A DNA stretch of 43,792 nucleotides from Oopsacas minuta (GCA_024704765.1 JAKMXF010000072.1:1-43792), one strand, 5' to 3'. Shown: positions 9,428-37,087, numbered from the stretch's first letter. Notes: generated by a model from the sequence alone, not told the origin. Numbers and translations: made by a program.

Positions 9428-9446
9428 TATATATATATATATATAT
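9428..9446. repeat. (TA)n microsatellite abutting the Ginger-like element
   Basis: Direct reading: tatatatatatatatatat. Confidence 0.9.
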
Positions 9447-10419: not shown

Positions 10420-10685
10420 GTAATCATTTTGTGGATGATGACAATGTAATTATTGCTAAAATTGATTCAACTAAAAATGAATTGACCGACATTACCATTC
10501 CTTCATTTCCGACTATCAAATATTTCCCCCTCGATTCTGATCAAATAATTGAATATAGAGGTAATAGAGACTTAAATTCCTTCATAAAATTTATTGAGAC
10601 TGATGGAAAAGCTGATGACCTCGAATATATTTCAGAGTCTAGCGAAGACGATGATGTCCCCACTCTATCTCATGATGATTTATAG
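10420..10685 (+). CDS. P4HB: Protein disulfide isomerase, terminal exon (second half of a' domain, acidic tail, HDDL*)
   Basis: Pyrimidine-rich acceptor ...cttttatctaAG (AG at 10418-10419), then (G)GT-NHFVDDDNVIIAKIDSTKNE..SFPTIKYFP..IEYRGNRDLNSFIKFIE..DDVPTLSHDDL*. Its phase matches the donor at 37057. Confidence 0.9.
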
Positions 10686-11460
10686 TTCTTTATATTCACA
10701 GTTCAGTTGAACTGCAGTATGTCTTATTGTGTGACTCCTGTAAATATATATCTTGTTATTTGTTTACAATGACTATAGGTAATGCAATTCTTCAATTATT
10801 TGATGTATATTACATATTTCTTTAGATATATTCCTGTTGAAATAGTCTAATATTTTTCCAGTTTCATTGGCAGAACCAACAATTCTAGTTTGGGTTTTAT
10901 TGAATAATGTGGATGGTACTAGGGCTGTCGACGAATCCTCATTATCTAAGACCCGGATATCGAATCCTTGGGCACAGAATACCCGAGTATTTGAATTACA
11001 GTGGGATTACATGCTTATTTTCTTACCAAAAAAGCACAATAAGTCTACCCATTATACTACGATATATGTTTGTCAATCATACTAAATAGCAATTTGATTT
11101 AATGCAATGGATAACTAAAGATCTATCGTATTATCTTGTCATCAACTAGTAGTAATATTCTGTCAGTCCATTATTTTGTAGTATTCTTGAAATGACCTTT
11201 CAGAAATACTAATGCATCCAAGGAGGAGTCACTTAAACTAGATCTTAACTTCGTGTTGAAAAGGCCTGCTGCAGAGAATGCTCTTTCTGCTTCTACATTG
11301 GNCATTCGTGAATTATGCAATATTATCTTATTTATTCAAATTCTACTAGTTTGATATATCGTATATTTTTATCTCAGAATAAGCGCCTCGCCTTTTGTGC
11401 ACATGAAACTCGGGGCTTATTTGGGAAAGACTTATTGGATCGTAAAGGAAAGCGAATTTG

Positions 11461-11570
11461 TAATCACGTAATCATAATCATGTAATCATAATCAATTGTA
11501 ATCAATTGCAATTCCTCCTGTAATCATAATCATAATCATAATCACTCAGCAGTAATCAACCCCAGGTCTG
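11461..11570 (+). mobile_element. hAT-type MITE (TAATCA-repeat family), right end only
   Basis: TAATCA tandem array ending AGTAATCAACCCCAGGTCTG, nearly identical to 24835-24920. Followed by ACTGTGGA. Confidence 0.75.
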
Positions 11571-11819
11571 ACTGTGGATTCGTTGAAAATCTAAGTTTTA
11601 CTATAGCTATATGATTATTTCAATATATACGATAGTATTCATTTGATTCAACTAACTTGACATCCAATTGCTAAAAAATATGGGAATATAATTCTATCAA
11701 TACACCCACTTTACCTGGCTTCATAAACCTGAGAAAATTTGAAACGCGTGTAACAGTAACAATAATAGTTAAAGTAATACTTACAATTGATGACGTGTAG
11801 TATAAGTTAGGATGGATAC

Positions 11820-12160
11820 ATTGGGCACCATAACGATGACGTCACCATGGTGGATGTGATGACTACAATGCAAATTTTTATATTTTGAGATTTCGAAAAT
11901 TTGACAAAACATGATTGTTTCGACACATTCAAGAAAATTCCTTTGCTAAGTCAACATTAAGTCACGGAATACTAGAATGCTCAATACTCCGATTTTATAT
12001 GAGAATGAAGAGTACTTCCATCTGATGGAGTGTGGTAGTTGCTAAATGGGATACTTTTCCCATGATAATAATGACGTCACCCTAGTAGAGTAATGATGGC
12101 ATTGCCAAACTTTCCACTTTGAGATTTCGAGAATTTGTCAATTTTGTAATGTCTTAATTA
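11820..12160 (+). repeat. Two diverged direct repeat units, period about 234 bp
   Basis: ATGACGTCACC at 11836 and 12071. TTTGAGATTTCGARAATTTGWCAA at about 11885 and 12118. Confidence 0.55.
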
Positions 12161-12711
12161 ATTTTACAATAAATTGCGATTTCAGCTGTGTCCATTCTCT
12201 ATACTTTCATCCAAGCTTTAAGGACCATACCACTGAAATGGTATGCTCATCTATTTGACACGCGTAGACGATGCATTTGTATGAGAGTCTGTGTAGAATG
12301 TTGATACCATAGAAAGTTAAGGTGAAAACCGTTATCCGTTTGCGTCCTGCATACTCCAGGATAATACTATCTTGCCTAAAACAAAACAATTCAGCAGTTG
12401 CGCCCTCCTCCTTCCCCTAACTGCCACCCTTAAGGCAATGCCATCCCTATAATCGTTATCTAAAATAATGGAAACGCGATCTGTAATAGCCCATGCCTAG
12501 TGACGATTATCATCACACTACCACGGCAAGTGTATAACGAAAAAGGCAGTGTATATGACGAGTCCAAGGAAGAGACGAAACACAGCATGGAATCAGACAC
12601 AAGCAAGTATTTTATCTAATTTCTAAACTCAATTTGTCTTGTCTGTTCCCTTTTGTTGTACGTTAGCTCCCCTCGTGTCTATACAATTAAAATTTATTGC
12701 ACGTATACGCA

Positions 12712-14055
12712 CAGGGTGTATAATGTGTCTTGGCAGGTATGAATTCATGATGTTTAAAGTTGATTTAATCAGACCACAATTTATTAATGAATTATATTTG
12801 TCTTACACTTAACTACTGAGTCCTATCTATTACAAATACACTTCTTTATAAATACTTTCACTTTGATTTGTATTTAAACCCATTTTTTGTATTTCTCTTA
12901 TCTTTTTGAAATATGAATGTCAAAAATCATGGTTTGTCGATTCGCCTGGAAGCAATTGCCATGTTGAAACCTGGGATTGAGCACAAGATCGTAGCTTCAA
13001 GGCTAGGTGTCGGTTTGAAGTCGATACAAAGGTGGTGGCATAACGAGATACCTGGAAAATACCAAAATAGTGAACTCCGTCCTGGTAGGATTCCAAAAAT
13101 GAAAAAGGTCTGCAAGATAGTCATCTCAAAATCTCTAGGAAAGAGCGAGAAGTTAACACGTAAACTTGCACGTATTCTCAATGGTAAGGGATATTCTGTC
13201 TCGCAATCAAGTATATATCACTATTTGACCAATTCTTTGGGAGTAAAATCATTCAAACGCCCTAAAATACCTCGATTGACACAGGAAATGAAGGATAAAC
13301 GTCTCCCGTTCGCTAAAGATCACATAAATTATACAATTGTTAACTGGATAAAGGTGTTCTAGTCAGATGAATCACCTTTCCAAGTGTTCTCCATGCCAAA
13401 TCGTCAAAACGGCCGTATCTGGGCTCGAAATTCAAATAACATTGAACCTATCGTTCAGATGAAATTTCCCACAAAAATCAAAATCTGGGGTATGATGTTT
13501 CACAGGGCTCTCTCAAAATTTCACATCATTCCTCCGAAACAAACGATAAATGGAACCTACTTTCGAGATCATATCTTAGCCAAGACGTGTAATGATGCTA
13601 CAAACAGAACTGCAAATACAGGTTCTATTCTGGAGAGATCAATACTTGCTGGCACGTCTGATTTCCTATTCTTGCAGGATGGTGCCCCTCCTCACACTGC
13701 GAACTTGACACAGAGATGGTGTTTAGGACACTTTCCTCGGTTTTGGAGGAAGGTTGAGTGGCTTGGTAACACGCCTGATTTAAACTCGATTGAAAGCCTC
13801 TGATCAATATTGAAAGATCATGCTTGACAAATGGCAAATGCTACCAAGCTGGAAGACTTAATTCTACGAGTCAAATCCGCATGGGCTGACATAGACCCTG
13901 ATATTCTAGAAAATTTAGTTTGTGTATGCCAGCTAGGATACAACTCGTATTAGATAGGAATGGTTGTTATATTGGCAGATGATTGGAACAAATACTCGAT
14001 AACGGAAAATTATATTTACATTTTACTGACCCGCCAAGACATATGATACACCCTG
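12712..14055 (+). mobile_element. Tc1/mariner-superfamily element A, DD37E, full length, inactivated
   Basis: About 27-bp TIRs CAGGGTGTAT(A/C)AT(G/A)TGTCTTGGC(A/G)GGT. Right flank TA, left flank CA. Transposase 12913 to about 13980 with F*SDES, FLQDGAPPH...PDLNSIE (37 residues between D and E), stops at 13362 and 13803. Confidence 0.9.
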
Positions 14056-14157
14056 TATATGTTGCAATGTAGAAGCGAATTTAGTGTGATCACCAAACTC
14101 TATCTTACACGACAACATATACAAGGTGAGGTAAAGTTTAGCGTTAATAACGGCCCC

Positions 14158-14635
14158 CACAAGGTTCAGTGTACCTTTCCTTGAGCTCTTTCGAATGCAC
14201 GGGTCTCTCAGAAAATCATATTGATCGAAAAAACGAGGTCCTTGAGATTTTTCATGATTCTTGTGTAGATTTTTCATGATTCTTGTGTAGAATTTTGCGT
14301 AGAATCCGATTCTACGCAAAATTCTACACAAGAATCATGAAAAATCTCAAGGACCTCGTTTTTTCGATCAATATGATTTTCTGAGAGACCCGTGACCTGT
14401 CGTATGTTCCGAAATCTTACGAAAATTCCGCAGTGCAAGTGAGGACTCGTGTATAACGTTACCCAGATCATCGGGGGGCCATCCAATTCATATGCTTCCT
14501 GGTAATTTGGACCAGTTACCTCAACACAAAATGCCCAAAATGGATTTCTCTGACATCGCACAGATAAAATGCACTGGCGGAGCAATGAGTAACAAGCAAC
14601 TAAAAGNAGTAATAGGAATTTTACAAAGAAAATTA
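14158..14635 (+). mobile_element. Putative 5' end of a Transib/RAG1-like element (CAC-starting terminus plus N-terminal-like fragment), interrupted by a palindrome
   Basis: 14158-14195 matches 30999-31037 (4 substitutions, 1 indel), which lies just 3' of a RAG1-like ORF. The 14400-14630 frame reads ITLPRSSGGHP...KMDFSDIAQIK..MSNKQLK; that part of the assignment is from recall only. Confidence 0.4.
14198..14394. repeat. 197-bp near-perfect palindrome: 87-bp arms, 1-nt loop at 14307, 22-bp tandem duplication in the left arm
   Basis: CACGGGTCTCTCAG...GCGTAGAATC-C-GATTCTACGC...CTGAGAGACCCGTG. TTTTTCATGATTCTTGTGTAGA occurs twice, at 14248-14291. Confidence 0.95.
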
Positions 14636-14639
14636 TGAT

Positions 14640-17600
14640 TCCCAGGTTTCAGACTATGGTGAATTTAATGGTAACATTTTCGAAAGCTTATGGGATGATG
14701 AAAAATTCACTCTAAAGCCTATGGTGAAGCCACTGTGCGGCATGTTCAATGATGTCGTTGGTTTTAAGCTTGAGAAGAAGCCTTTTTATAGCCAACATTT
14801 CGTTTGCAACGTTCACCCATTCGATGTCATACTGGTTGACTGAATATGTCCGAATTTGCAGTGTGAAAAATATATTTTTCCAAGACGGAATAGGTCCGAA
14901 TAGAATAAGACCGAATATAATTCAAGACTGGAATAAAAGCCTGATACAGATCCAACGATAGTCCAATCAAATACCACCCAGTTATCCGAACGAATATACT
15001 CAAATGTCATCTTCTCAGAATAAAATTCGGTCTTAATCATGTTTCCCATGTCATGCTCCTGCATAGTCTTACTTAATCCATTCATTCTGGATAATACCTT
15101 GCGGAGAAAGCCAAGCGATATAACAGATTTCCCGAGGGAATCTTGTGATAGAGAACCGCGACCAAATCAATCTAGTTTGAATTCGGAGCACCAATCTTCT
15201 GTAGACTTACAAGAATTGCCTGAAGTTTTTTTATCATAGTGTTAATTTCCTCAAACTTACAAACCCATCGGACTTCTGTAAGAGAGGAGGCTGCCATTAT
15301 AGGCTGTTTGGGATAACACTCCTTTTGAACAGATTAGAATATTTCCCTGTGACTGGCGATGTTGAAAATGTCATGTAAGGACTTATAGACATTTACAGAG
15401 TGTATCAAAAGTGCTGTCGTATTGTCTATTTGACTACAACATATTCAATACACAATATACACTTATACTCTATTTACCAATATAATGTCCTGACCGATTT
15501 ATAACTTCGATAATACGATTAGGCATACGATTTGTCAAATTTTGAAGAATCACAAGGGCAATCCCTGACCACACCTTTTTCAAGTGAATTATGAGGGAAT
15601 TTATAGTGCTAACTTCGGGGAGTTTACTGAGCTTGTCTGCAAGGATAGACCATAAATTTTCGATCGTATTCAATTCTTGGGAGTTGCGTGGCCAGCCAAC
15701 CTTCGCCCAGTAGTTTGGCAGGTGTTCTGAACACCAAGTCTGAGTGAACTTGGCGGTGTGGGCTGGAGCGCCATCTTGCATAAAAATCGACTGGGACATC
15801 TGTTCAGTCATAGACTGTTCCAAAATGGTGCCAGAATTTGATGTTCTTCTTATCGCTCCATGCAAGTTCCTTTCAATATTATTTCTCGCTATACTCTCCT
15901 TTAACATTCTGTTTCTGAGGGATTATATGGGGACTGAGAGTGCCTGATGAGACATCATCCCCAAACTTGGATTTTCGTCGGGAATTTAACGCATTTGAAT
16001 GGCTGAGCATCGGCCGAACTATGTGACCACACTCGGTCGTTCTGCCTGTTTGGTGGTACAAATAGTTGAAAAGGTGGTTCATGGGACCATAAAACCTTCT
16101 CCCAATCTGTTTACCAATTCTTGTTTGAGGGCGAAGAGGAGTTGATCTTGCATCATTTTAATGCTGAGACGAGGGATTCGCTACCTTTTGTAAAGATAAA
16201 CACTGATGGAATGCATCAAATAGCGATGGACTGTTGAATGTGAAGCGGAAAAACCAGAATTGACCAATGTACGTGCTATAGATCGTGTAGATTTTCCTCT
16301 CTTGCACAAAGTCTTGGATATGATGATTTTAGGATCGCGAGAAAGGATCTTTGGGCGTCCGCACCTGGTTAAAGTACCCAAGGATTGTCCAAGTTTTCCC
16401 GACGGGACCATCTTTAGACTGATCTAATTGAAATATCTAGAACTTCTGACACTTTATTAAGAGTCAAACCAGCCTTTAGAATCCGAATGGCTCCATTTCG
16501 AAGTTCAATACCATGGTCGTTGACATCCATTATGCGAAAAATGTATAAACTTAGAAAAAAATATCAAAATGTGAGAATATAAAATAATTTGTGCAGATAA
16601 ATATACAAAAGAAATTCAACTATCGGAATGATAGCGAAATGATAAGAGTCAGGATTGGGTTGCGAATATTATGAACTTCCGATAATTGTTAGTTATACGA
16701 CAGCACTTTAATACACCCTGTATAACATTATTTATTCAGTAACTGTTCGAAAATACGCAGCTACAACCAAATTCAAACGGTGCGCAGCACAATAGATGTA
16801 CAGCAACCAAGGGTAACGTCTTTGTTTAGCACCTACACCTTTGTAACACCCGCTCATAACAGATGCGCCGTCTGCTCTAAGTGCCAATAGCGTGGCGGAA
16901 GAACACAACTTTTCAGTGGTTGGCCAAACTCCTTACACAATAATCTGGGCATTAGTTTCTTCTAGCCTGGTGACATCATAAAATCGCTCTTCGTTTTGTC
17001 ATTCGTTTGCAAATCTAAAACAGGTGGACAGCTCTTCACGCCCGCATTATCTTTGCATTCATCAATGTACATTGAATACATCTCCGCGATGTTTAATGGT
17101 TTCTCAATTTGATGACGAACCTCGAAAGCTAACGCTTTTATCAAATCGATTGAGGATCGCTTTGACGTGTAATCGTACGCATTGTATTGTTGTAACATCC
17201 TACCGTGCAGTTGTTTAAATGTTGGATTAGTGCATAGCATGGTCTTGATAAATTCTTTCCACTTTCCAGCATTAACAGATTCATTAGTTTCATCGTGTCC
17301 TCTATATGCTATCCCCTCAGAACAAAAGTACAGATGATACCCCAACAGTGTTTCATGTGTTCTTGATTATTTTCCACTACAGAAGGCCTCAAGGTCTAAC
17401 ATATTTCTAATGCCGGCTATTGGATTCTTTTTCTGGGTACTTTAACTTTCCCAGCGAGTCATGCAAAGTCGGTAATCAGAACTGCGTCATGGGACTTAAA
17501 ACTTCGATTGGTTTCCATCGCCTTTGACCAGGTAGAAAAGCCAATTTAGTAAATGCTGTATCACTTTTTGAAGTTGATGTGCTAAAGTTTCTACAAGCAG

Positions 17601-18109
17601 AACAAACGCCTTGTCTTTTCAATGCTGTTTTCAAGCCATGGGAAGCTAGTATAACACATTGCTCAAAAAGAGCGATTATTTTGGTCTCTCGGATAGGACA
17701 GTAAATTTGGCTGCGTTGGTCCGTCTATCAAAGTTCCAAGGCAACTCACATCCACGTCTTGATCAGTTGAAATTGTAGGAGTCAATGTAGAAAATGTCGC
17801 AGAAGGCGCAGATGTAGATGAGATTAGGGTTTCAGTGCTAGCTGGAGAGCAATCCTGATTATTCTCTTCGGCATTTGTTTCCACCCTTTTAGCAAAATAT
17901 GACGTTATTGGTAAAAGGTTTGCGTTATTCGCCTTCCTTTTCATTATGATATACGATACGTCTAATATAAAATGCAAAAGATATATGTAAACATAAAATC
18001 AGCCGCTGGCAATAAGAGGTTTTATTGGAGATACTGACTGAGAATACTGAAAGTGTGATGAGTCTCAACTAATTTCGCCCCCCAATATTTCGTTAAGTGT
18101 CCACCACTG
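14640..18109 (-). mobile_element. hAT transposon relic (ZMYM1-type), 3'-truncated, interrupted by Tc1 element B
   Basis: Terminus CAGTGGTGGACACTT at 18109. Transposase from MKRKAN (about 17944): RSF..FPWLE, IAYRGHDE, YSMYIDECKD, ADGASVMSGCYKGV..YIYCAAHRLNLVV (16750-16860). Beyond element B it continues SSLTEVRWVCK..., LSKTMQ, IRSD. Confidence 0.8.
15396..16720 (-). mobile_element. Tc1/mariner-superfamily element B, DD37E, full length, inactivated
   Basis: TIRs CAG(A/G)GTGTAT..AAAGTGCTGTCGTAT with TA on both sides. Transposase 16530 to 15470 (MDVNDHG..., FMQDGAPAH...QELNTIENLW, 37 spacing), with stops and frameshifts. Confidence 0.9.
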
Positions 18110-18314
18110 TGGAGCTCATTGACTAAACTTTGAATTCGATCGCGATATTCACCATATTTACTTCTAAGACGTTAATACTATTAGTGTCAAATTCCTCTCT
18201 TTGTTCTCTTACCCTTACAATGAAATCAATCACACTTAAATCCATACTTTTACCAAACAGTTGATTTGTTATACAATGGCTATGCTCAGGTTGTACTGAT
18301 ACTAACCCCTTAAC

Positions 18315-18941
18315 CAGGGGTGCCCAACATACGGCCACGCAAGCATGCACTAAGACTTTTGCAGTTTGTAAAATATACTATTTCTTAATGAACAATTCCT
18401 AAGCCACATTTCGATAGCATTCATACTGGGTGTCGAATTTCAAATTATTTGACATTTTGAAGATTCTTATTCATTTTCAATACACAACAGGTGCATGTGT
18501 TTAGTAATAATAATCCTTAGCGGTGTATAGATCTAAACTAGTATAATTCTAAGCTTATAATTGAAATTCAGATACTGCGTTTACTCATACATTAAGAATA
18601 ACTCGAAAATACATTAAAAATGGCTACTATATGGAACAAAACATCGACCATATAGTCAGACATATGCGTCATCAATCATCGTCCATGTCTAAGTAATAAA
18701 TCATTGTCTGTACTCGTGTTAGTGGTGGCATAATGAGTATTCAGGTTTCGTATTAGTATTTTTTATCATTTTCTGTAGTCTGCCAATATTTCATAGTATG
18801 GTCCCTTTCTGTAGCATTTCCACTTGGATATTCCAACAAATTTCCACTAAATAAATCTGAGATTTATAAATTGGTCCATGCCCCACCAAACTATTGAGGA
18901 AGTCAATGTGGCCCGTAATTCAATCGAGTTGGGCACCCTTT
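18315..18941. mobile_element. 627-bp hAT MITE
   Basis: TIRs CAGGGGTGCCCAAC and GTTGGGCACCCTTT. 8-bp TSD CCCTTAAC (18307-18314) and CCCTAAAC (18942-18949). Confidence 0.85.
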
Positions 18942-19921
18942 CCCTAAACTAACAGCGGACTGCACTCCAAAAGCTTTTACTATAAGTATATGATACGGCT
19001 TGTGAAAGTAGTACACTCATCGATATTGAAGATTTCTGTGAATTGCAATATTGCAGAAACATTGAAAGAGTGGACCTTCTTGCTAATTGTTCTCCGTAAC
19101 GAAGTAGACATATTGGCGCTGACATACAGTTTGCGGATCAAACCATCAAAAGACTGAAATGTAGAGACCATTAAGTTTACCATGTCTGATGTCCCGGTAA
19201 CCCTAAAACAAAATATACAAGTACAGTCGAAACATGTTATCTTCAAACAATCTTATACCGAGAGTATTAAGAAAAATGAAATTAGCGCAAAGATCGGATT
19301 GTTCACTTAAACGCAAAATTATACTAAGAAAACCAGGTTTTTGAATAAAGCAGTTTTATTATCATATAGTTTTTAACGTAACAGGGTTTAATTAATTACC
19401 TTGTTCGTGACATGTATCTTAAGTTGGAATGATAATCCTTGATTAATCTCGATGCCACTAATGATGGGGAGAATAGAGGTAAAACAAGCAAGGACGCACC
19501 TCCAGGCATAGGACTTTTGCAAAGATATGATTAGGAGCGCGAAAATTGAGGAATTTTACATATGCCATTATACTAAATATCCATCAAAGCGAATGAAATT
19601 TAGAGAGTAGGAGCTATAGAAGTGTGCTCATAATACCCTGAATTTCTCCCTGGTTGCGCTGTAGTACCCATATATTTCTGTGAACCTTTATCAACTAATT
19701 CAATTCACAGTTGGTATTTAGGTGGAAATATGCTTGATTTTCTCATTATTTCTATTATCTCATTAGAGTCAGCCTATCTTCAAACCTAGAAATTCGTAAT
19801 TTAATTCAGTGTATTTGTTGTTATGTTTTCTATTATCGCCAAGTTCTGCTTATCAGAATTTCTGTTCTTCAGTTTGTTTAATTGGATCAAGTTTCATTGT
19901 TGTATTTTTGGCAATTGTAAC

Positions 19922-20123
19922 CATGGCTGGATTCGTTTAAAGGTTAACGGCACAACAGTCAACTAACTAATATTTTTGCATAGTCATGGGTGTATTTTTT
20001 CAGTTCTAGTAAAAACGCTTAATTTATTTAATGGACTAACATTTGCAATGGTTAACCGATTAACTGATCTTATTGATACAAAGTTAACTGTCCCATTAAT
20101 TCGGTTAATCAACCCCAGTCCTG
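19922..20123. mobile_element. Degenerate hAT-type MITE related to the TAATCA family
   Basis: Right end GGTTAATCAACCCCAGTCCTG resembles the 11570 and 24920 ends. Left end and TSD are weak. Confidence 0.35.
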
Positions 20124-20150
20124 TTGTTACATATAAAGCTTAATGAAACA

Positions 20151-20190
20151 TCTGTATAATTAAAACGCAATTAATCTATGTATATGTGTG
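20151..20190 (+). mobile_element. 5' end of a non-autonomous Helitron
   Basis: A|TCTGTATAATTAAAACGCAATTAATCTATGTATATGTG aligns with the minus-strand end at 28533 (A|TCTCTACTACAAAAAACGTAATTAATCTGTATATATGTG). Confidence 0.5.
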
Positions 20191-21029
20191 TCATTTCATT
20201 TTGAATCGGCCAGCAGTCATACACTTATCTCTCACATTTCCTTACTAAATCTATCTGCCTATTTTTGTATGGGATATCCCTTCATATATTTGGGAATTCA
20301 GATCTTATGTCATTTTTCCAGAATCCAAGACTCACCGTCCAAAATCGTTTCACATAACACTCCTACATCTACTTATAACTCTCTCTATATATATTCTGTA
20401 TATACACAAATCCCCGTCTTAGTTTCCATTTTCATATGAACCTTTGTCGTTTCTAGCTAAGTTTACATTAATCTACTCTGTCAAAGTTTAGATTCGTTAG
20501 AGTAATCGATATGTGGCTACTAGTCACTTGCACACGCCATCACCTTTTCTCAAACTTTCCTTTTTAGATATAATTCGTAGTAGTAATAGTAATTATATAA
20601 TAGTAGTACATATATTTGTAGAGGAATCTCGTGTCGTTTTAACGAGATTCCAATTTATATATATGTTAAAATATTAAATTCGACGATTATTTTCTTGGTT
20701 TGTCAGAATTGATTGAGAACTGTTCGGCAAGCTTGGCAGTAGATGACTTAAACTCTAAAACTCATTTATTCAATTTTGAAATCAAAGTTGAATATCGAGT
20801 AATATGAATTACATTATTTTACTTTTAGATATAGCAATAAATAGGATAATAACTCATACCAAAGCCATATTAATTTGCTTTCGAAAATACATATTTTGAT
20901 TATTCAAACTTTACAAGTTTGGAGTGCTGTAGGTAAGATTCCTTTTATCCTAGATGCTGATTATAATATTTCCCACTGATTGAACTATGGAGAATCCAAA
21001 ACACACTTACATTCTATTTTATTTATCTC

Positions 21030-23720: not shown

Positions 23721-23984
23721 TCGGAAATATTTGAATGTTAACATATCAGTCAGTGTATATAATGTGGAGATCAGTACAGTGAAATGACCTAAATTTATTT
23801 ATATTATGTATAAATTTATATATTTAGGCGCATCAGTTTCCTCGTTCGTCTAAAGACAAACGTCGCTTACTACTTTACATTATCTATACTGTATTGATTC
23901 ATCATGCACAATTGCAATTATATCCATGAACTTTTAGTTGTACCACAATAGATTTTTGTAATTATGCTGTTTTTTAGTACTTTT

Positions 23985-24809: not shown

Positions 24810-24920
24810 CAGGCCTGGGGCTGATTATGATTACAATCGTAATCAATTGTAATCAATTACAACTTTTCCTGTAATCATAATCATAATCATAATCACTCAT
24901 CAGTAATCATCCCAGGTTTG
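24810..24920 (+). mobile_element. 111-bp hAT-type MITE (TAATCA-repeat family), both ends present
   Basis: CAGGCCTGGGGCTGATTA...TAATCATCCCAGGTTTG. Left flank ACTGTGGA; right flank CAGTTTGG does not match it. Confidence 0.8.
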
Positions 24921-25056
24921 CAGTTTGGCACTGAGTTGTNAGATTTAACTATCCATTTATCAATTATATATTTATTGATTTACTTAAACTTTGTGATACA
25001 AGCAGCTATATTCAGAGCAATAATCAGATCTTTCCGCCAGTTGTTTGAAAAATAAT

Positions 25057-26860: not shown

Positions 26861-28171
26861 CAGGGTGACCAATAAGTTCTGCCACATCACTTCATATAGT
26901 AATATATTTTATGTAACCATGATAAATAGGTAGCTTTCGTATTCAATTCATTGATTTAAGTCTTAGGATCGTAATTCAACAGAGTAGTATAGCATTTAGT
27001 AAGTAGCAACAAATTTGGTGGCAATGGAAAGCAAACGATCAGCAATAATTGAATTGTTCAAAAATGGGAAAAATCAAAAGGAAATCACGAGAATACTAAA
27101 TATTCCAGAAACAAGAAGAAAGTTGATATTTCGTACTATAAAACGTTTCAACGAGACTGGTAGCATTATAGACAAACCTAGAAGTGGTTGCCCAGTGTCA
27201 GTTACGACTGTACGGATGAGAAAAACAGTCAGGAGTCGGGTATGGCGGAATCCTCAGCGATCAGTAAGAAAAATGGCCAAAGGACTAAAAATATCTCGTG
27301 GATCGCTTTAAATATTGCAAGAAGAGACTTAGGGCTATATTCTTTTAAGCGGAGAAAAGTTCACTTCATTACTGATCAAATACAAATGAAGAGGCTCTCA
27401 AGAAGCAAAGGACTCTTTTCTCGATACACCACCCCAGGCCTAGATCGAGTACTTTTCTCTGACGAGAAACTCTTTACTGTGGAGGAGGCATCAATTCGTC
27501 AGAATGATGGAATTTTGTCGACTTGTACCTCTGCCATCCCTGAAAAATACAGATTTGTCAAACGAGTCCAGAAACCACTCTTGGTGACGCTTTGGGCGGG
27601 AATATCCTCTGTTGGTCTTACATCGCTTGTTTTCGTCCCATCTGGTGTAAAAATCAACGCTGCAACATACAAGGAGCTCATTCTGGAACCATTAGTGAAA
27701 GACCTTGGCAAGACCATGTTTGAAAATGGTTCATTTGTGTTTCAACAGGACGGTGCGCCTGCTCACATTGCTAAAAGCACTCATGAGTGGCTTGATGCGA
27801 ATATTCCCCACATTATCACGAAGGTAGAATGGCCTCCCTCTAGTCCAGACCTAAACCCTTTGGATTTCTCTCTTTGGCCGACTTTGGAGTCAAGAGCCTG
27901 CTCGAAGTCTCATACGAATATCGAATCATTGAAGACATCTTTGGGGCGAGAATGGGAAAACATCTCTCAAGAAATGGTTCGTACCGCTGTAGCGGTAGTC
28001 CATCGGCGTCTGAAGTCTGTCATCAAACAAAAGGGTGGATATATTGAATGACAGTCGTATAAAATATATGTAATAGTATGTAGAAGCGTTCGTTAAAATG
28101 TCAACAAGATCGAATGAGAATTCGTTAAGTACAATAAATTTTCATTGTGGCAGAACTTATTGGCCACTCTG
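26861..28171 (+). mobile_element. DD37D (maT-type) Tc1/mariner element, full length, near intact
   Basis: 26-bp TIRs CAG(G/A)GTG(A/G)CCAATAAGTTCTGCCACA with TA TSD on both sides. Confidence 0.95.
27024..28051 (+). pseudogene. DD37D transposase with a single frameshift at about 27308
   Basis: MESKRSAIIELF HTH region, FSDEK, QQDGAPAH...SPDLNPLDF (37 residues between D and D), ending GGYIE*. Confidence 0.9.
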
Positions 28172-29749
28172 TACAGTCATGATAGCGTAATAATTCCATG
28201 ATAACTTATCCTTTGTCCAGAAACATGGTGTCAAAACGTGTGGCATATTGATGGATACCTGTGAGCCGTGATTCGAATTTCAAACTTCTTTCATGTATAT
28301 TGGCTAAGCAGTGGCTGATAATGTTATTTTTTCGAAATTCCAAAAAGGTGACAGTGACAACGTAATTTCGTCATATGAGTGAATTTCGTCCAAGATTCGA
28401 ACTTGTCCGAGCCATGCCCAAAATACCTTTGTATGCCCAAATCTGCTCATTGAGTTCTCTACTTTCTTCAATCAATTCTCGATACACAAACATACACATA
28501 TATACAGATTAATTACGTTTTTTGTAGTAGAGATTGGCCTGTATATTGACACATAAAGTGAAACATAATAATTCAGATAGATGATCAACTTCGTTAATAT
28601 TTTTGCTCTTAACATACAACCCAAAACATCTAAGATCACTTGTTTTGGTTTCTTCTTTTGTTATTTATTTCATCAAAATTATAACTAATCCTATGCATTA
28701 CATGTCCTAAGTAAAATGTAAAATTGTGGAAAATTATTTATCTTCACCACTTAATCGAAATTTCCAACAATTTTGGAGGTAATGTATAATGGGAAACTTA
28801 TTCAATTCCAAACAAATATTATGTATCATCACTCAAATATAGTTCATTCCAACTTTTTATATTTGAATCTCCTTTTTAAACTAACTTAATATTTACAGTA
28901 CACACCATTTATTTAAATAATGTGATATTTTTGTAGTCCCAAGATCACTCTTTATCATCTCTGCCACAGGAACTGGGCTATTAGCAGATTCTGGATGTTG
29001 CATTGTCAGAGCCTAATAAATATATTATTTTCACAGGAAGATTGTCTACTAATTGAATAACCAGTTACATCTAAAATTTCAATGATTTGCTGGTTCAGAA
29101 TTAGTTTTTGCGAGTAGATTTGTTTCGACTAATACAGATGAACGATGGAGGATATTGTGCGTAATATTGAACATAACCTGGTTAAGATAATCCGGTAACA
29201 AATGCCTCAAATATTGTCGAGCGACTTGCTCTATCTTCAATGTTGTCATCAGAGAATGTATCTATTATACCTTCCTCAAACAGTATTGAGATTTAAAAAA
29301 CAATTTAACAATTGTGATAAAGTTGAAGGTTTATAAATATTTGTTGTTCTGAGTGAGGAGCTTCAGTGGCAGACACTAGGGGGCCCCCAGATAAGTTAGA
29401 AAGAATAAAGTTTGAAGAAATTTGAGTAAAAAAGGAAAAAGACAAGGAATCTTTTACTTTAAAAAGGAAGGAGTGAGTACAAATTGTAATAGAAACAACA
29501 ATACCGAATAGCATAATTATATTGCGAAATTGATAAAAGACACTACTAATTCCTTAAGTGTTCAAAAGCTTTAATAAAGAAAAACAGCTAAAGTGTTCCA
29601 AAGACTTAAGTGTGTAGATAATATATTTATGAAGTGTATTAGTTAAATGGTGCAACTCAGACTTTTTTATTCACCTAATGATCAAGCACCATGTCCGAAT
29701 TTAGTCTTTTTAATATGTCTTTGTTCATCAAAAGCAGCATAAGGTCACT

Positions 29750-30290
29750 GGCCGACGAAAATCTAAGTTGTTCGACCCCCACCTTAATTTGCTATTCATC
29801 GCACTAAAACTCATTTTTACCGTTAGGGTACCTACAGGGAAGGTCTTCGAGATGGCAAGATCTTTGAAATGGTTGGGTACAACTCAGGATCAATGTGCTT
29901 TCCGGCTGCAATCAAAATTTTCGCTCGTTCGCACTCAGTCTTTAGTGATGCCGAGTCAATCTTCAGACAATCTCGGTAGTTGCCAACAAGGGTGGATATT
30001 GTGTTATAATCCCGGTATGTCGCTTTTGCCGCATCTAGAGCTTCCAGTGCTGCCAGTATGCTGGTATTCTTCGTTCCAATTCCTCAAGAAACATTGGAAC
30101 AGAAGCTGCGTCAAGACTTTCACAAAACTCGCATGGGCATGTAGATCTTCTAACATCCCGCATCGAAACATACAGATGATCCTCATAGTCCAATGCAATG
30201 TTTACAGTTGAATCAAGTCCTTCAGCACACAGTGGCTTTAAATGGCTATCCGTAGGCTTTAGGTCTTGGGTACATTTAAAGTGCATAAAA
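29750..30290 (-). pseudogene. Possible N-terminal fragment of a Transib/RAG1-like transposase
   Basis: Degenerate frames with DYED..RRSTCPCEFC and KMSFSAMNSKLRWGSNN, loosely resembling 14400-14630. Recall-based and weak. Confidence 0.25.
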
Positions 30291-30368
30291 TGTATTATGT
30301 ATCTATGGGTTATTGCATCTAACTAGTAGAATGACAGCAAAATATATTTGTATGGTTTCTATTTTTGA

Positions 30369-30547
30369 GTTATGATGACGTAAGCAAAATTTGCGAAACA
30401 TATAAACCAGCTTAAATCTATTTAGGTTGGAGATAGGGGTATATAATATATTATTTACTAATGGGTGATCACTATTTATAGTAGATTGACCAGATTGAGT
30501 ATTTACATGGCTTCTATTATTCTTGTTATGATGACGTAAGCAAAATT
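30369..30547 (+). repeat. Exact 23-bp direct repeat GTTATGATGACGTAAGCAAAATT
   Basis: Copies at 30369-30391 and 30525-30547. Confidence 0.9.
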
Positions 30548-30998
30548 ATAAAAGTTGAATTCCTGAAATATCTGTGTTATTTCAGGTATTTAGGTAGAGA
30601 GTTTACACTAAAATTATGTACTAAGGGGTAAAGTGTCTAGATTATCAATTTAACTTTCTTTATACTGTATATTATTACGGCAATAGCAATTTTATGTATG
30701 AAGCGAAAAAATTGAAATTTTGGAATTTTAGGATGACTTGGACATTTTGCGTGTTCTTAATACCTGACGGTTAATTATCCTGTAAATTTAAATAAAATTA
30801 TTGTAGCCTTATTGCGACCCAAGTGTTGTCCTGGCATGGCCTCCTCTGTTGCGTCGCCTTTTCGCAATACACTTCAGATGGATCAGAGTTACTTAACGTT
30901 TTCGCCACTGGGGATATGCCGTTGCGGGTCACGTTTCCATTATCTGGGCTCGCTATGATTGGGATTGCGTTGCCTGAATAGCCTCGGACAGAGGTCCC

Positions 30999-31560
30999 CA
31001 CAAGGTTCAATCTACCTTGCCTTTGAGCGCTTTCGAAAACTATTTGTATGGAAGTTGAAGATAGAAAGCAAGACGCTACTCAAATATTAAAGAATTAAAT
31101 AGTATGTCTTGATCGATAGTCTGGTGAAGCAAATTTGTACATTTCAGCCTGCAGGTGTGTCCGATTCCTTCACATTCCTTACGCTTAAGGACATTGCGAA
31201 AACCTATCAGAACTGGATCGCTTTGGCTCAACCGATGGACAAATATATCTCTAGAATTTGTTGTGAATGACATTTTCCTCGCAAGATGTTCACGATATAT
31301 TCGGATTAATTTATTGCAAGCCTCCACTGCTTCTTCAGAGAAATTCTTTAATCCAAATCCTCCATTACAATCTCGAATTAGTTCAGTGGAGTGAGCAAGT
31401 AGACGATGGAGAGATGGAGTAACATTTGCNCCTGCTCTCTCGACTTCCATTAGCTTAACTAAGTGCTAGAGGAAGTGAACCAGGAATATGCTTAGTAATA
31501 TTTGTATTACTGACTCAATTGGTTCGATTACAACATTAAATCATGTATAGTGAATCTAGT
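30999..31560 (-). mobile_element. 3' end of a Transib/RAG1-like transposon: catalytic-Glu region, C-terminal Cys/His motif and candidate TIR
   Basis: ORF 31450 to 31076: TPSLHRLLAHSTELIRDCNGGFGLKNFSEEAVEACNKLIRIYREHLARK, compared with RAG1 [34 protein letters not shown]. Candidate terminus CACAAGG at 30999. Confidence 0.75.
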
Positions 31561-31585
31561 TTCTTCATTTCCTTGTATTATAAAA

Positions 31586-31613
31586 GATGGGACAGAACTT
31601 TGGGACCACACTG
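31586..31613. mobile_element. Solo Tc1-like terminus
   Basis: Reverse complement TA|CAGTGTGGTCCCAAAGTTCTGTCCCATC resembles the TIRs at 26861 and 43221. No partner end found. Confidence 0.35.
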
Positions 31614-34600
31614 TAGATGAGTAATGTATGTTTGAGATGAAAGAAAATAGGATTGTTATAGTGGAAACAATTCTGAAAACAATTTGACATATTGCGCCGA
31701 CATAAGTATGGCTCAGAATATAAACGACTTGCTGATCAAAGAGTTACCTAAATACTAACCAGGTAATTTATTCTGTATGATCTTGAAAAATTGCAGTTAT
31801 CACTGTAATTTCAACTGTGTATGTGAGCACAAAAAGTCATACTTGTCAACAATTTTTGAAAGTGTATTGATTAGTCTTTCTCTTGTGTTTTTGTGCTAGG
31901 TAAATACGAAACAAGATTCATTACATGAAATTCGACATATAAGCATATATTAGTACAATAGTTGCTAGAATTGGAGTGATTTTGTACTATTGTGGTAAAA
32001 TTACCTGAAGTATGTTCAAAAGTACTATTCTGGATGTTTTCGCCGTATGTTAAAACAGTTTCACATTTGAATTAGTAATGATAACTGTAATTTATCATAC
32101 AGTATATAATCAATGGCCTGGATATGATTTGGGTAATTATTTTCTTTAGCAAGCTGTGGTTAAAGTAAGCCATGATGCACGTGTTTATAACAACTATACT
32201 ATAGTAGAGTCGGCCCTGTCAAATATCTTAGAAACATAGAGCAAAAAATTTTAGTTGCTCGAAATTATCAAAAATTTATTCTAAAATTGAGATCTAAGCC
32301 CTAATGTAGAAAAATTGAAGTTCAATTAAATTAGGCCTGATAGAATTCGTTTTGATTTCAGTTCGTTTATGCACAATTTATTCACAAGATTATTAGTCCC
32401 ATAAAATTTGAAAATAATCAAATTTTGGATTGTCCTCACGAAATTTCAGTAACAATTTGTAAAGGTGGAGGTGGTGATAGTGTCGATTGATAAATATAGA
32501 TGAATACTACGATAATGTTACTAAATGAATAAATAATTATCATTAAGAATTTTTGTTTCTATAGTGTATACGTTGTGTCAATTGAGGGTAAATCAATTCT
32601 TCACACACATCATTTCGGTAAACTTGAATACCACGTCAGCAAAGCATGAATTTATTGGGTCGAATTCCAGCGTCCCTTAGAGGAACATAATATAGTGATA
32701 TTATAATTTTGCATCCACTTAGTTGCATATCTTTATGCCAAATGTATTAGCCAATATTTCCCAAAAGTGTATAATTACACATATCAAGTTATGTGCTTTT
32801 AATCGTTTAATACAGTTCATTATCCTCGCTTAAAGTGTTACAGATTTACTTTATTGAATTGTTATCTAATCGATAATATCCCGGATGCACAAAATAATGC
32901 ATTTGTATTCTTATATTTAGGTAAATTGAGTACTATGTATATATCGACAATATGACTACACTATATAGTGATAAAATAACGAGGAAACAAGCATAAGTGT
33001 GGAATTCATTCGGTATTTGTATTTATACACATTCCATTCGTACTTTAGGCAACAATTTGATTATATATTCACCATTCGCATGTAAGTTCGTGAATTCTTG
33101 CTTCCTAGATGTTTACAGGGAATCTATGCCTATGAAATATCAATGCATTTTGAGGATATAACTTCACTAGGTAGCTTAGGGTGAATGGTAGCAAGCGGTA
33201 TCCCAAAGAATATGTATATCAAAAGGTTATCATCTGTTTAGGATTCCTTAGGTGATGGCAACGGAGAACAAACTCATGATTTAGCAACTAGGAAGATGTA
33301 CATGTAGATCAGTGGTTGTCAACTTTCTGCGGCAGATTCCTTTCATCTCAATGTTTCAAGACACACAATGAATTGTGCCGCGTCACACTGGTTGAAATAC
33401 GCTGGGCGACAACTTATACGGTGGTTGATACAAATCTGAAAAATTATGAATTTATCATGCATGGTCCAATTCAATCAAATATTATTCCTTTTGTGCAACT
33501 AGAGCTACTGCATAGTTTGCGATAATAAATCTCTGCGCTTTGTGCTCAAGTATTGAGAAATTCTCAATGCTATTTTGAATTAGAATTTCGCAATTCCCAG
33601 TTGTTACAAAAGTATGAAATTATCGATTAACCAATGAAGAAATAGAATTCAATTAGTATTACCAAATATAACTAATATGGCGGATGTCATTTTCACACTT
33701 TCAAATCTTATTAAATCCAATAGTTGTTTGGAATAAATATTCAACAAATTTTCAATGGATACAATGGGATAAGATAGTGCCAGAAACCTTTATTGAAACT
33801 CAATATCGACTATTCACCAAATAATATTTGGTTTCAACTAATATCAAAAGCTTGAGTAAATGCCTGTAGCTCACATGCAAAATCGGAATTTCCAGCTCTC
33901 GGTTAATCATAATTGAAATATGATTTTATGAATATTTAGTACCTAATCAATAGTACCCAGAACTAGAAAAATTCCGTAAGGTTTTGACAAATTTGAGACA
34001 ATGTAGTATCAAAATGTACAAATTGATTCTCTTGTCATGGAGTAATGGACAGAATTGATGCATTTATTAACCTTAACACAGAAAGCTAAGGTAGAAACTA
34101 TTGAAATTTTCGGTACGCAAATTTTTTCTTTATCTTCACCATTATTTTTCACTGTAATTCTAACACTTCACCAAAATACGTTTGTGGTATACTGTTCTTT
34201 GAAATTCATCATTTGTCTATTAATGTTTAATATAATGACACGTTTAATGTAAGAATATTATCCATCATTCACGTAATAAGTGAAATGCAGCTATTATAAA
34301 TAGTAAAGCCTTAAAATTGCGTAAATGTAAACTTACTGTGAAGACAGAAGCCGAAAGAAGTTGCAGTATAAACACAAATAGGAAACTCTTTCCAATGAAA
34401 GAGTTCAGATTAACAAATTATACTGAATAATTTAGAAACATGTTGTTTACAAACGAATTGAAACGCATGCAAAAAGAGAAAAGGAAAACTAATGAAGTTC
34501 GATTGCGAAAACTCTGATTGTGCGTAAACACCCTGACAGCACCCAAGACCAAGCTAACAATAATTCAAACAAATACCTGACTACAGTCAGGAGAGTGAAC

Positions 34601-35819
34601 GAAAATTCAGTGATATAACAAATAGAAGATTTACGATTAACAAATTCATTAGATAAAATGATCGTTTACATGTAAACTAGTGCAAAGTGGGTAATTTGAT
34701 AGCGAATGAATATATATGCCCAAATTTGGAAAATTCTAATTGATAATAGTTTCAATTAGGGCTTACAATCCCAAACCCCAGGATAAATATTGGATTAATT
34801 ATCCTCATTTACTATAAGAGGTAATCTCAATTACAACAGTTGTGTAATTCTAAATACTATATATTCATGTTATAGTATATTTATCCTCTGCCCACTATAT
34901 GGTGTAAATAATTGATATTACCCTGCCACGAAATACCGCATAAAACGGAAAGAAATTATGGTCCTAAACACTGCGTTATAACAGGTATCTAGTGTTTACT
35001 AGATTATATATGATAAATATAGTAACATGGGGTTTTGGAAGGGGAAGGTACAACTCTGGGAGTATTTCCCTAGGTCGACCAAATGGTTTGAACCTATGTA
35101 CAGCTGAGTTTTGGCCTAGAACTAATTTCGAATATAACTACGAACCTCGTGCCGTATATAAATAATCTTTAAATTAACTAAACCAAGAAATTTTCGCGTT
35201 AAATTTATGTCTGAATTTTAAAATACTATACTCCACAAAACGTAGATTTCCTTGGGAAGGATGAGAGGATGTTAGCAACAAGAGAAAGTGCTATAAATAA
35301 TTAATTGTACTATGAAACATCGAATTTATAGTGATAACGGCTAATCAATGTGATGAAACAATCGATCCAACGTCAAGAAAAACGATAACTATGCGAGAAG
35401 AGTATGGCATTTGACACATTTCCAATGACCACAATCAAACACCATTCTAAATAATCAAATCAAATCATTAATTACAGCCTACCACCAATTTTCATTAAAA
35501 ATATCGAAAGAAAATCTTACCTTCAGTTCAGTAAATTTAAAATGAATTATACATATACTATAAACACTTCAAGTAGAAATTATGAAAAACTTCCTAGAAT
35601 GTTTAAAAACCGAATTTTATCCAATTCTACTGTGGACAAATAGACGTTAATTAAATGCACCAGATGCATATTCGGGATTTATTAATCCGAACTGATCCGA
35701 AAGGGTCTCATTATCCGAACCACAAAGTATTTCACGTCCAAATCCTTTTTAGTTATGACAAATATTTATACCTTATCATATTCCATAGATTTTTCCAAAT
35801 ATAATTCCATTCTTTCTCG

Positions 35820-37056
35820 ATGTTCACTTCAGGACATGCTGTGAGATTTGTTGTGTTCGTTGGTGTCTTGCTATTTTCTTTTGCTTCATCTAACATTATC
35901 GAAGAAGAAAACGTTCTTGTACTCACTACAAATAATTTTGACGATGCATTAGAAAGATACAGCCATATTCTTGTTGAGTTTTACGCGCCTTGGTGTGGGC
36001 ATTGTCAGGCATTGGCACCAGAATACATACAAGCTGCTACAAAACTCAAGGAAATGGGATCAGAAATTCGATTGGCGAAGGTTGATGCGACTATAGAAAA
36101 AGATTTAGCTCAATCCAGAAATATAAAGGGCTACCCTACATTGATATTCTTTAAACATTCATCTCCAATAAATTACAATGGGCCTCGAAAAGCTGAGGGC
36201 ATTATTCAGTGGCTTGAGAAGAAAACAGGATCCCCAACAACTATTATCGACTCATTGGAACAACTTGTGGCATTTTCCAACACTGACAAGGTTGCTATTG
36301 TTGGGTTTTTCGCTTCAGAAACATATACAACTATATTCATGGGGGTCGCAGGGAAAATGGATAAACTTCCTTTTGGACTTTGCACAAACAAGGATATATT
36401 TGATTCTACTCTTTCTGGCAACGATGGAATAATAATTTACAAGGGATTTGATGAAAAGAAGGTTGTCTACAATGATGAACTCAATGCAACCAAAATTGAA
36501 AATTTCATAAACATACATCAGTTTGAGCTTGTTTCAGAATTTTCCCAAGAATTAAGCGAAAGGTTTTTCGAAGCTAATATAGATAGACATTTGATATTTT
36601 TCGCTCCAAAGGCCGAGGTCTCCACTGATAGGTCAATCGATCTCCTACGGTCGATTGCTTCTGACTTTCGTGGACAAATTCTATTCATTTCGGTTGATAC
36701 CTCTGCTGATCAATATAAAGGAATTATCGAGTTTTTTGGTATCAATCAAGACGAAATTCCTTGTCTGCGCGCAGTTATTCTTCAAGAAGATGTTGCTCGT
36801 TTCAAACAAAAGGAACCTGATTTATCTGAAGAGGGCATAAGAGATTTTGTTACTGATTTTTTATCAGGCAAATTGAAACATGATCTTAAGTCACAGGTTG
36901 TTCCAGACGATTGGAATGATAATCCTGTGAAGATACTTACATCCTCCAATTTTAATGAAATCATTATTGAAAGAAAGAGTAAAAAAGCCTTAGTGGAATT
37001 TTACGCACCTTGGTGTGGTCATTGCAAAGCTTTAGCACCTGTTTGGGATCTTTTGG
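35820..37056 (+). CDS. P4HB: Protein disulfide isomerase, 5' exon (signal peptide, a, b, b' and first half of a' domain)
   Basis: Intact 412-codon frame with hydrophobic N-terminus, two WCGHC active sites and SQVVPDDWNDNPVKIL linker. Canonical donor G|GTAAGT at 37057, phase 1. Confidence 0.95.
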
Positions 37057-37087
37057 GTAAGTAGTTTATTTGTATCGAATTATACAT

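What the first reader, a model, noticed from the sequence alone, without database searches (positions are those of the whole stretch)
10420..37064. PDI gene halves in reversed genomic order that splice perfectly into a 500-aa protein
Seen in sequence: the 5' exon (35820-37056) ends ...WDLL-G|gtaagt in phase 1. The 3' exon sits 25 kb upstream on the same strand and begins ag|GT-AAT-CAT. Joined, they give 1237+266=1503 nt, or 500 aa plus stop, reading WDLLG-NHFVDDDNVIIAKIDST, the normal P4HB a'-domain continuation. Neither half shows decay, although nearly everything around them does. I saw no second copy of either exon in the window. Inference, four options: (a) tandem PDI paralogs with very large TE-filled introns (>10.4 kb and >6.7 kb) whose partners lie outside the window; (b) transposon-driven circular permutation of the locus with the break in the intron; (c) trans-splicing or back-splicing; (d) mis-assembly.
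Basis: partly seen in the sequence, partly recalled or inferred. Interest (0 to 1): 0.8.

Follow-up and report, generated by a model that had tools for sequence, protein, structure and literature searches.

The report
PDI exons reversed by scaffold joins
The two halves of a glass-sponge protein disulfide-isomerase gene are both real and intact, but their reversed order most likely comes from how small contigs were strung together in a draft assembly, so it is probably an artefact.

Summary
Window 35820-37056 is an intact 5' exon (412 codons, then G|gtaagt). Window 10420-10685, on the same strand, is an intact 3' exon (ag|GT, 87 codons, stop). Together they make a 500-aa a-b-b'-a' PDI with two CGHC sites.

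Single-N scaffold joins lie at 11302, 14607, 24940, 31430 and 38384, and four of them separate the two exons. The genome is the Oopsacas minuta draft, built with SPAdes and then scaffolded with SSPACE, Pilon and GapFiller. At every join a contig stops inside a multi-copy repeat, and the neighbouring contig does not continue that repeat.

In three related sponge assemblies the same gene is collinear, with TE-filled introns of 5.6, 16.4 and 26.6 kb at the same phase-1 site. The O. minuta paralog is also collinear, with a 720-bp intron. Both exons show equal purifying selection. Neither exon has a second copy anywhere in the assembly.

Best reading (about 0.8): an ordinary two-exon PDI gene with a long intron (at least 12-20 kb), whose contigs were ordered wrongly. 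A collapsed tandem duplication (about 0.1), a recent real rearrangement, or trans-splicing cannot be excluded without reads. Interest is low.

The parts
35820..37056 (+). PDI 5' exon: signal-like N-terminus, a domain (CGHC), b and b' domains, and the first half of a' with the second CGHC. Ends in phase 1 before gtaagt.
   Evidence: Thioredoxin in 2 stretches, Thioredoxin_6. 65-69% identical to P0002-P0006.
37057..38383 (+). Start of the intron on the same contig as the 5' exon. Unique sequence except a 240-bp MITE at 37830-38069. Ends at a scaffold join.
10420..10685 (+). PDI 3' exon: second half of the a' domain, acidic tail, C-terminal HDDL, then TAG.
   Evidence: Matches the 3' exons of L043, L070 and L071 at 60% identity.
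1..10419 (+). Sequence contiguous with and upstream of the 3' exon, taken as the 3' part of the long intron. It is TE-filled. The scaffold starts inside a Tc1/mariner-type MITE (inner edge of its right TIR). The acceptor ag is at 10418-10419.
11302..11302 (.). Single-N scaffold join, 616 bp after the 3' exon. The left contig stops inside a repeat (10917-11301) whose other copies continue alike.
14607..14607 (.). Single-N scaffold join. The left contig stops inside a repeat (14339-14612).
24940..24940 (.). Single-N scaffold join. The right contig starts inside a 1.24-kb repeat. The left contig ends in a 130-bp stretch 99.2% identical, inverted, to 45262-45391 of the scaffold.
31430..31430 (.). 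Single-N scaffold join. The left contig stops inside a 1.2-kb repeat with 20 or more copies (30227-31429).
38384..38384 (.). Single-N scaffold join, 1.3 kb after the 5' exon. The right contig starts in the interior of a 1.8-kb hAT derivative.
38385..38554 (+). 170 bp that are 100% identical to the last 170 bp of the scaffold (C72 46288-46457). Other copies of this family are 90-97% identical.

Best explanation
The window is most of a 46.5-kb 'super-scaffold' of the Oopsacas minuta draft genome. It is built from at least six short contigs joined at single Ns. One contig (1-11301) carries the 3' exon of a canonical PDI gene. Another (31431-38383) carries the 5' exon. The real gene is most likely an ordinary collinear two-exon gene. 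Its single phase-1 intron would be long and full of transposons, about 12 kb if the two exon contigs abut and about 20 kb if the tail of the scaffold lies between them. The scaffolder, working from read pairs that fall in repeats, placed the 3'-exon contig upstream instead of downstream. One false join, for example at 31430, is enough to produce this. Shown: the exons, the Ns, the repeat-interior contig ends, the assembly method, the collinear orthologs, and the equal constraint on both exons. Inferred: that the order is wrong.
For: Assembly structure:
- Five single-N joins are present, four of them between the exons.
- G000 has 61,460,524 bp in 365 pieces, which matches the O. minuta paper. 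The NCBI O. minuta protein P0007 is encoded exactly on C319.
- The paper used SPAdes on PacBio plus Illumina reads, then SSPACE (936 scaffolds to 365), Pilon and GapFiller. Different animals were used per library.
- That is about 571 joins in 61 Mb, whereas this scaffold has 5 in 46 kb. About 150 kb of other loci from this genome showed no N.

The joins themselves:
- At each join a contig ends inside a multi-copy repeat. The other copies of that repeat go on alike, and the neighbouring contig does not continue it.
- Contig ends share near-identical local repeats: 170 bp at 100% and 130 bp at 99.2%.
- Both scaffold ends lie inside repeats.

Comparison with relatives:
- The gene is collinear on one strand in three related assemblies, with introns of 5.6, 16.4 and 26.6 kb at the same phase-1 site.
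- Two further relatives have introns of more than 17.6 kb and more than 39 kb.
- The paralog on C319 is collinear.

Constraint and copy number:
- dN is 0.26-0.32 for the 3' exon and 0.25-0.26 for the 5' exon, with dS saturated.
- Neither exon has a second copy in the assembly.
Against: No reads were available, so none of the joins is shown to be false. SSPACE needed at least 5 read-pair links per join, and five joins form a consistent chain. In a de Bruijn assembly, contigs can truly abut at a single N. I found no sequence that positively links the 5'-exon contig or the scaffold tail to the start of the 3'-exon contig; the MITE there has only a TA target duplication, which is uninformative. 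The meaning of a single N in SSPACE/GapFiller output rests on my recollection of those programs, not on a tool result.
Confidence: 0.8

Rival explanations
1. The order is real because the locus is a recent tandem duplication of a unit of at least 46 kb, and the assembler collapsed the near-identical copies. One intact gene then spans the copy junction (5' exon of copy 1 to 3' exon of copy 2), and the scaffold is one unit opened inside the intron.
For: This would give exactly the order seen with both exons intact. Both scaffold ends lie in repeats where an assembler would stop. The required intron of about 20 kb is in the range seen in relatives.
Against: Neither exon has a second, even slightly diverged, copy in the assembly. 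The scaffold end (interior of a hAT derivative) does not continue into the scaffold start (interior of a MITE); its canonical continuation sits at 38555 instead. None of the relatives examined shows a duplication within the stretches read.
Confidence: 0.1
2. The order is real and the gene was recently broken in its intron by a transposon-mediated rearrangement (for example alternative hAT transposition). This would leave two still-intact but no longer cis-spliceable halves.
For: The region is dense in hAT, Tc1/mariner and Transib fragments. A hAT derivative here is rearranged relative to its five canonical copies.
Against: Both exons are free of stops or frameshifts and have perfect splice sites. 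dN is as low in the 3' exon as in the 5' exon. This is the only classical PDI copy in the assembly that keeps both CGHC sites; the paralog lost the second. The ends of the proposed transposed block sit beside the N joins at 11302 and 24940, so they are contig ends.
Confidence: 0.05
3. The order is real and a full-length mRNA is made by trans-splicing of two transcripts, or by splicing a long read-through or circular-type transcript with exon order permuted.
For: Donor and acceptor are canonical and phase-compatible. Nothing in the sequence forbids it.
Against: There is no conservation of the reversed order: three relatives and the paralog are collinear. The order itself rests on four unsequenced joins. 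No transcript-derived protein of this gene is in the protein collection searched. From general knowledge, intergenic trans-splicing of protein-coding halves is very rare in animals.
Confidence: 0.02

Closest known systems
Classical protein disulfide-isomerase (PDIA1/P4HB type) of animals
   Same: It has the a-b-b'-a' thioredoxin-fold architecture, two CGHC active sites, an acidic C-terminal tail and a KDEL-like end. It is 40-48% identical to arthropod and echinoderm PDIs.
   Different: The C-terminus is HDDL (HEDL in relatives) rather than KDEL. The gene has a single intron, which splits the a' domain and is very long.
Oopsacas minuta 'Protein disulfide-isomerase 2-like isoform X3' (P0007, scaffold C319:173999-176165)
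   Same: Same family and 57-58% identical. It has the same single phase-1 intron position (...WDKLG|DHYG), and the published model splices there.
   Different: The paralog is collinear with a 720-bp intron. It has lost the second active site (SPSSRQS in place of APWCGHC).
Orthologs in unnamed ENA HiFi assemblies (ERZ25071281, ERZ25069837, ERZ25072740, and others; presumably other glass sponges)
   Same: 65-69% identical 5' exons and 60% identical 3' exons. Same phase-1 intron site, and long TE-filled introns.
   Different: All those resolved are collinear on continuous contigs of 0.6-2.4 Mb without Ns. O. minuta shows the reverse order on a patchwork scaffold.
Read-pair scaffolding mis-orders (SSPACE/GapFiller joins through repeats)
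   Same: Short contigs ending in repeats, joined at a single N with no overlap. Local near-identical repeats lie at contig ends. The pipeline is documented in the genome paper.
   Different: The error itself is inferred, not shown; no reads could be examined.
Genuinely permuted or trans-spliced genes (e.g. Drosophila mod(mdg4); exon scrambling / circular RNAs)
   Same: Only the superficial picture matches: a downstream exon lying upstream on the same strand with compatible splice sites.
   Different: Here there is no continuous sequence supporting the order, no conservation of it, and no transcript evidence. This comparison is from general knowledge.

Membership tests
Classical PDI (PDIA1/P4HB type) | Four thioredoxin-fold domains a-b-b'-a' | tested here: met
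   5' exon: Thioredoxin in 2 stretches (1.2e-44) and Thioredoxin_6 (2e-36). 3' exon: Thioredoxin profile positions 49-102 of 103. The exons were scanned separately and never joined.
Classical PDI (PDIA1/P4HB type) | Two CxxC (CGHC) active sites, in a and a' | tested here: met
   APWCGHCQ and APWCGHCK are both present in the 5'-exon translation.
Classical PDI (PDIA1/P4HB type) | N-terminal signal peptide and C-terminal KDEL-type ER retention signal | tested here: inconclusive
   A hydrophobic N-terminus (VRFVVFVGVLLFSFASS) is seen. The C-terminus is HDDL, and HEDL in the relatives and the paralog. No signal-peptide or retention predictor was run.
Classical PDI (PDIA1/P4HB type) | Groups with PDI orthologs in a tree | tested here: met
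   The C72 protein groups with P0004, P0005 and P0008 (support 83/92) inside a sponge PDI clade (100/100).
Truly permuted / trans-spliced gene | The exon order is supported by continuous sequence | tested here: not met
   Four single-N joins lie between the exons.
Truly permuted / trans-spliced gene | The arrangement is conserved in relatives | tested here: not met
   Collinear in L043, L045/L070, L044/L071 and in the paralog.
Truly permuted / trans-spliced gene | Transcripts joining the two exons while the genomic order is reversed | not testable with these tools
   No reads or transcripts of this species could be reached. No transcript-derived protein of this gene is in the collection.
Collapsed tandem duplication | A second copy of an exon, or the scaffold end continuing into the scaffold start | tested here: not met
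   Both exons are single-copy in the assembly. The end and start lie in unrelated repeats.
Collapsed tandem duplication | Double read depth over the unit | not testable with these tools
   No reads were available.
Scaffolding mis-order | Joins without sequence overlap, made by a read-pair scaffolder, at repeat-bounded contig ends | tested here: met
Scaffolding mis-order | Reads that contradict a join | not testable with these tools
   No reads were available.

The most novel reading that the evidence does not exclude
The reversed order is real in the animal, and a full-length PDI mRNA is nevertheless produced by trans-splicing or by splicing across a permuted or duplicated locus. That would make this an essential metazoan housekeeping gene expressed from exons in non-collinear order.
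Probability: 0.03. Interest if true: 0.75.

Novelty: not a real feature. Interest (0 to 1): 0.1.

Why it matters
If the reversed order were real, it would be a rare case of a permuted or trans-spliced essential gene in an early-branching animal. As it stands, it matters mainly as quality control. This O. minuta scaffold is a patchwork, and its gene order should not be used for synteny or gene-structure claims. The only two-site PDI of this species is almost certainly mis-annotated as a truncated single-exon gene. The published pipeline allowed introns of at most 5 kb, and the intron here is at least about 12 kb. The one biological point worth keeping is the consistently huge, transposon-filled intron at one site of this gene across glass sponges, in a genome whose average intron is 341 bp.

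Tried and rejected
- Word-index protein search with the 3' exon alone returned nothing. Because of the length window and word requirement, this is not evidence of absence.
- tblastx of the relatives' flanks and introns against the scaffold found only transposase similarities. There was no conserved flank, no nested host gene and no usable synteny.
- I tested whether the 5'-exon contig end and the 3'-exon contig start flank one MITE insertion. The MITE makes only a TA duplication, so the test is uninformative.
- I tried to read the 7.9-kb stretch 38385-46287 as a tandem unit or circle, because its first 170 bp recur at the scaffold end. I rejected it as a simple tandem duplication. The 46287|46288 adjacency is the canonical interior of the hAT derivative, as seen in five other loci and in a relative. 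The structure is left unresolved.
- One search was a mis-specified pattern search and gave nothing useful.
- Walking along ERZ25766962 to 39 kb and ERZ25072730 to 17.6 kb downstream did not reach their 3' exons before the look-up cap.
- All searches were exon by exon and by reference.
- The contig is not human.

Full report
**What is there.** Window 35820-37055 is an open frame of 412 codons, followed by G|gtaagt. Pfam finds a full thioredoxin domain, a Thioredoxin_6 (b-b') region and a second thioredoxin stretch in it. Both CGHC motifs are present. Window 10420 follows ...tatctaag. GT plus 10422-10685 reads NHFVDDDNVIIAKIDST...SHDDL and then a stop. Pfam places this piece on positions 49-102 of the 103-position Thioredoxin profile, which is the half of the a' domain the 5' exon lacks. 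The sum 1237 + 266 = 1503 nt gives 500 aa plus a stop.

**Which genome.** The window is positions 1-43792 of a 46,457-bp record, C72, in an assembly of 61,460,524 bp in 365 records. Those figures match the published Oopsacas minuta (glass sponge) draft. The NCBI O. minuta protein P0007 is encoded exactly, both exons, on record C319 of the same assembly. This is not human DNA.

**Copies and paralog.**
- Six-frame searches of the whole assembly find each exon only once.
- The next-best match is a 57-58% identical paralog on C319.
- That paralog is collinear, with a 720-bp intron at the same phase-1 site (G|gtgagt ... ag|GT GAC CAT).
- It has lost the second active site, reading SPSSRQS.
- The C72 gene is therefore the only classical PDI found in this assembly with both active sites.

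The window is not continuous sequence. Single Ns sit at 11302, 14607, 24940, 31430 and 38384. Record C72 is thus a scaffold of at least six contigs:

| Contig span | Content |
|---|---|
| 1-11301 | carries the 3' exon, 616 bp from its right end |
| 11303-14606 | TE-derived |
| 14608-24939 | TE-derived |
| 24941-31429 | TE-derived |
| 31431-38383 | carries the 5' exon, 1.3 kb from its right end |
| 38385 onward | TE-derived |

A run of 1,118 N begins just past the window, at 43793. It is either a further gap or a withheld stretch; I cannot tell which. Four joins therefore separate the two exons.

**How the assembly was made.**
- The genome paper states that Canu-corrected PacBio reads and Illumina reads were assembled with SPAdes 3.9.
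- The 936 eukaryotic scaffolds were then joined to 365 'super-scaffolds' with SSPACE (at least 5 read-pair links), followed by Pilon and GapFiller.
- That amounts to about 571 joins in 61 Mb, or one per roughly 107 kb.
- This scaffold has five joins in 46 kb.
- About 150 kb of other loci I fetched from the same genome, many of them repeat copies, contained no N.
- From my own recollection of these programs, a single N is what SSPACE writes when it expects two contigs to touch or overlap but finds no overlap.

**Quality of the joins.**
- At 11302, 14607, 24940 and 31430, one contig ends in the interior of a multi-copy repeat.
- The other genomic copies of that repeat continue alike past that point, and the adjoining contig does not continue it.
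- At 38384, the right-hand contig starts in the interior of a 1.8-kb hAT derivative.
- That derivative's canonical order is seen in five other scaffolds and in a related species.
- The 170 bp after that N are 100% identical to the last 170 bp of the scaffold, while other family members are 90-97% identical.
- The last 130 bp before the N at 24940 are 99.2% identical, inverted, to 45262-45391.
- The scaffold starts inside a young Tc1/mariner-type MITE and ends inside the hAT derivative.
- Read pairs that support these joins must largely fall in repeats, so the order and even the membership of the pieces is weakly founded.

**Comparative evidence.** The closest proteins to the 5' exon are 65-69% identical ORFs on long, N-free HiFi contigs of five ENA assemblies. 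These are presumably other glass sponges. All end at the same G|gt phase-1 donor. In a tree, the C72 protein groups with the P0004/P0005/P0008 set. I walked along these contigs to find the 3' exon:

| Assembly and contig | 3' exon position |
|---|---|
| ERZ25071281 ctg49572 | 5.6 kb downstream, same strand |
| ERZ25072740 ctg126417 | 16.4 kb downstream, same strand |
| ERZ25069837 ctg28057 | 26.6 kb downstream, same strand |
| ERZ25072730 | not found within 17.6 kb downstream or 10 kb upstream |
| ERZ25766962 | not found within 39 kb downstream or 10 kb upstream |

All three exons that were found begin ag|G(G/T) and end in HEDL. The introns are full of hAT, MULE, LTR-retrotransposon, Transib and Helitron-type genes. 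The ancestral and usual state of this gene is therefore collinear, with a very long transposon-filled intron. If the O. minuta pieces are re-ordered, the intron would be about 11.7 kb when the two exon contigs abut. It would be about 19.8 kb with the scaffold tail between them. Both values fall inside the range seen in relatives.

**Constraint.** Against the relatives, dN is 0.26-0.32 for the 3' exon and 0.25-0.26 for the 5' exon, with dS saturated. Both halves have been kept under equally strong purifying selection. This fits one working gene and does not fit an old break.

**Verdict.**
- The most economical reading is that one or more scaffold joins are wrong; a single false join such as 31430 suffices. 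The gene would then be an ordinary two-exon PDI with a long intron (confidence about 0.8).
- The main rival is a collapsed recent tandem duplication (about 0.1). It predicts double read depth. It is not helped by the lack of any second copy or by the mismatch between scaffold end and start.
- A very recent transposon-driven break (about 0.05) or trans-splicing (about 0.02) cannot be excluded without reads, but nothing positive supports them.
- I could not show a join to be false, and I found no sequence that positively links the 5'-exon contig to the start of the 3'-exon contig.

**Annotation consequence.** The paper mapped RNA-seq with a maximum intron of 5 kb, so this gene could not have been modelled correctly whatever the true order. 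The only protein of this gene in the collection searched is the 414-aa ORF of the 5' exon.

**Earlier notes from this scan.** Note s1-235718 reads 11461-24920 as a block moved by reversed-end hAT transposition. Its two ends lie 160 bp and 20 bp from the N joins at 11302 and 24940. They are contig ends, and that reading needs the same caution. Note s1-235787 (30999-31560, Transib tail) agrees with my RAG1-like Pfam hit for 31076-31450, but that region straddles the N at 31430.

Noticed in passing
L043:11210-16827; L045/L070 (ERZ25072740 ctg126417, about 109384-125767); L044/L071 (ERZ25069837 ctg28057, about 117509-144108); window 37057-38383 and 1-10419: The single phase-1 intron of this PDI gene is huge and transposon-filled in every glass-sponge-like assembly examined: 5.6, 16.4, 26.6, more than 17.6 and more than 39 kb. 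The O. minuta paralog has 720 bp at the same site, and the published genome-wide mean intron is 341 bp. Why this one intron collects transposons across species is unexplained.
   Followed up: partly
L007:2640-2718 (G000 C319, about 175140-175216): The O. minuta PDI paralog (NCBI 'PDI 2-like isoform X3') has lost the a' active site (LFYSPSSRQS instead of EFYAPWCGHC) while keeping the first CGHC. It is a one-site PDI.
   Followed up: partly
window 35820-37064: The genome paper mapped RNA-seq with TopHat -I 5000. An intron longer than 5 kb cannot be modelled that way, so this gene is probably annotated, if at all, as a truncated single-exon protein. The only protein of it in the collection is the 414-aa ORF.
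   Followed up: partly
window 1-112; e.g. L059:570-1495, L060:567-1484: A young Tc1/mariner-type MITE of 916-926 bp with 110-bp terminal inverted repeats (TACAGTCAGGGGAC...) and TA target duplications. It has 20 or more copies at 98-99% identity. The scaffold begins at the inner edge of one right repeat.
   Followed up: partly
window 37830-38069: A 240-bp palindromic MITE in the intron just after the 5' exon, with 40 or more genomic copies at 93-97% identity.
   Followed up: no
window 38385-39291; scaffold C72 45391-45729 and 45730-46457 (L016/L020): A 1.8-kb internally deleted hAT element has its three parts in canonical order in five other scaffolds and in a related species. Here the parts are scattered and partly inverted, and its first 170 bp after the N at 38384 recur exactly at the scaffold end. 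This may be a real local rearrangement or a mis-traversed assembly graph; it is unresolved.
   Followed up: partly
scaffold C72 43793-44910 (just beyond the window; L016:794-1911): A run of 1,118 N sits inside a Tc1/mariner transposase gene and starts exactly at the window's end. It is either a sized scaffold gap or a withheld stretch; I could not tell which.
   Followed up: no
L017 and L018 (ERZ25072730 ctg83160 and ctg83147): Two contigs at 288-290x coverage carry an identical PDI 5' exon but differ by transposon insertions nearby, such as a pogo/Tc5 transposase at L018:2820-4214. They are probably two haplotypes with insertion polymorphism around this gene.
   Followed up: no
window 24810-24939 and scaffold C72 45262-45391: A roughly 110-bp MITE with CCTGGGG...TIRs plus 20 bp of flank is 99.2% identical, inverted, between the end of one contig and the interior of another. 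A third copy, 90% identical, lies at 11484-11570.
   Followed up: partly
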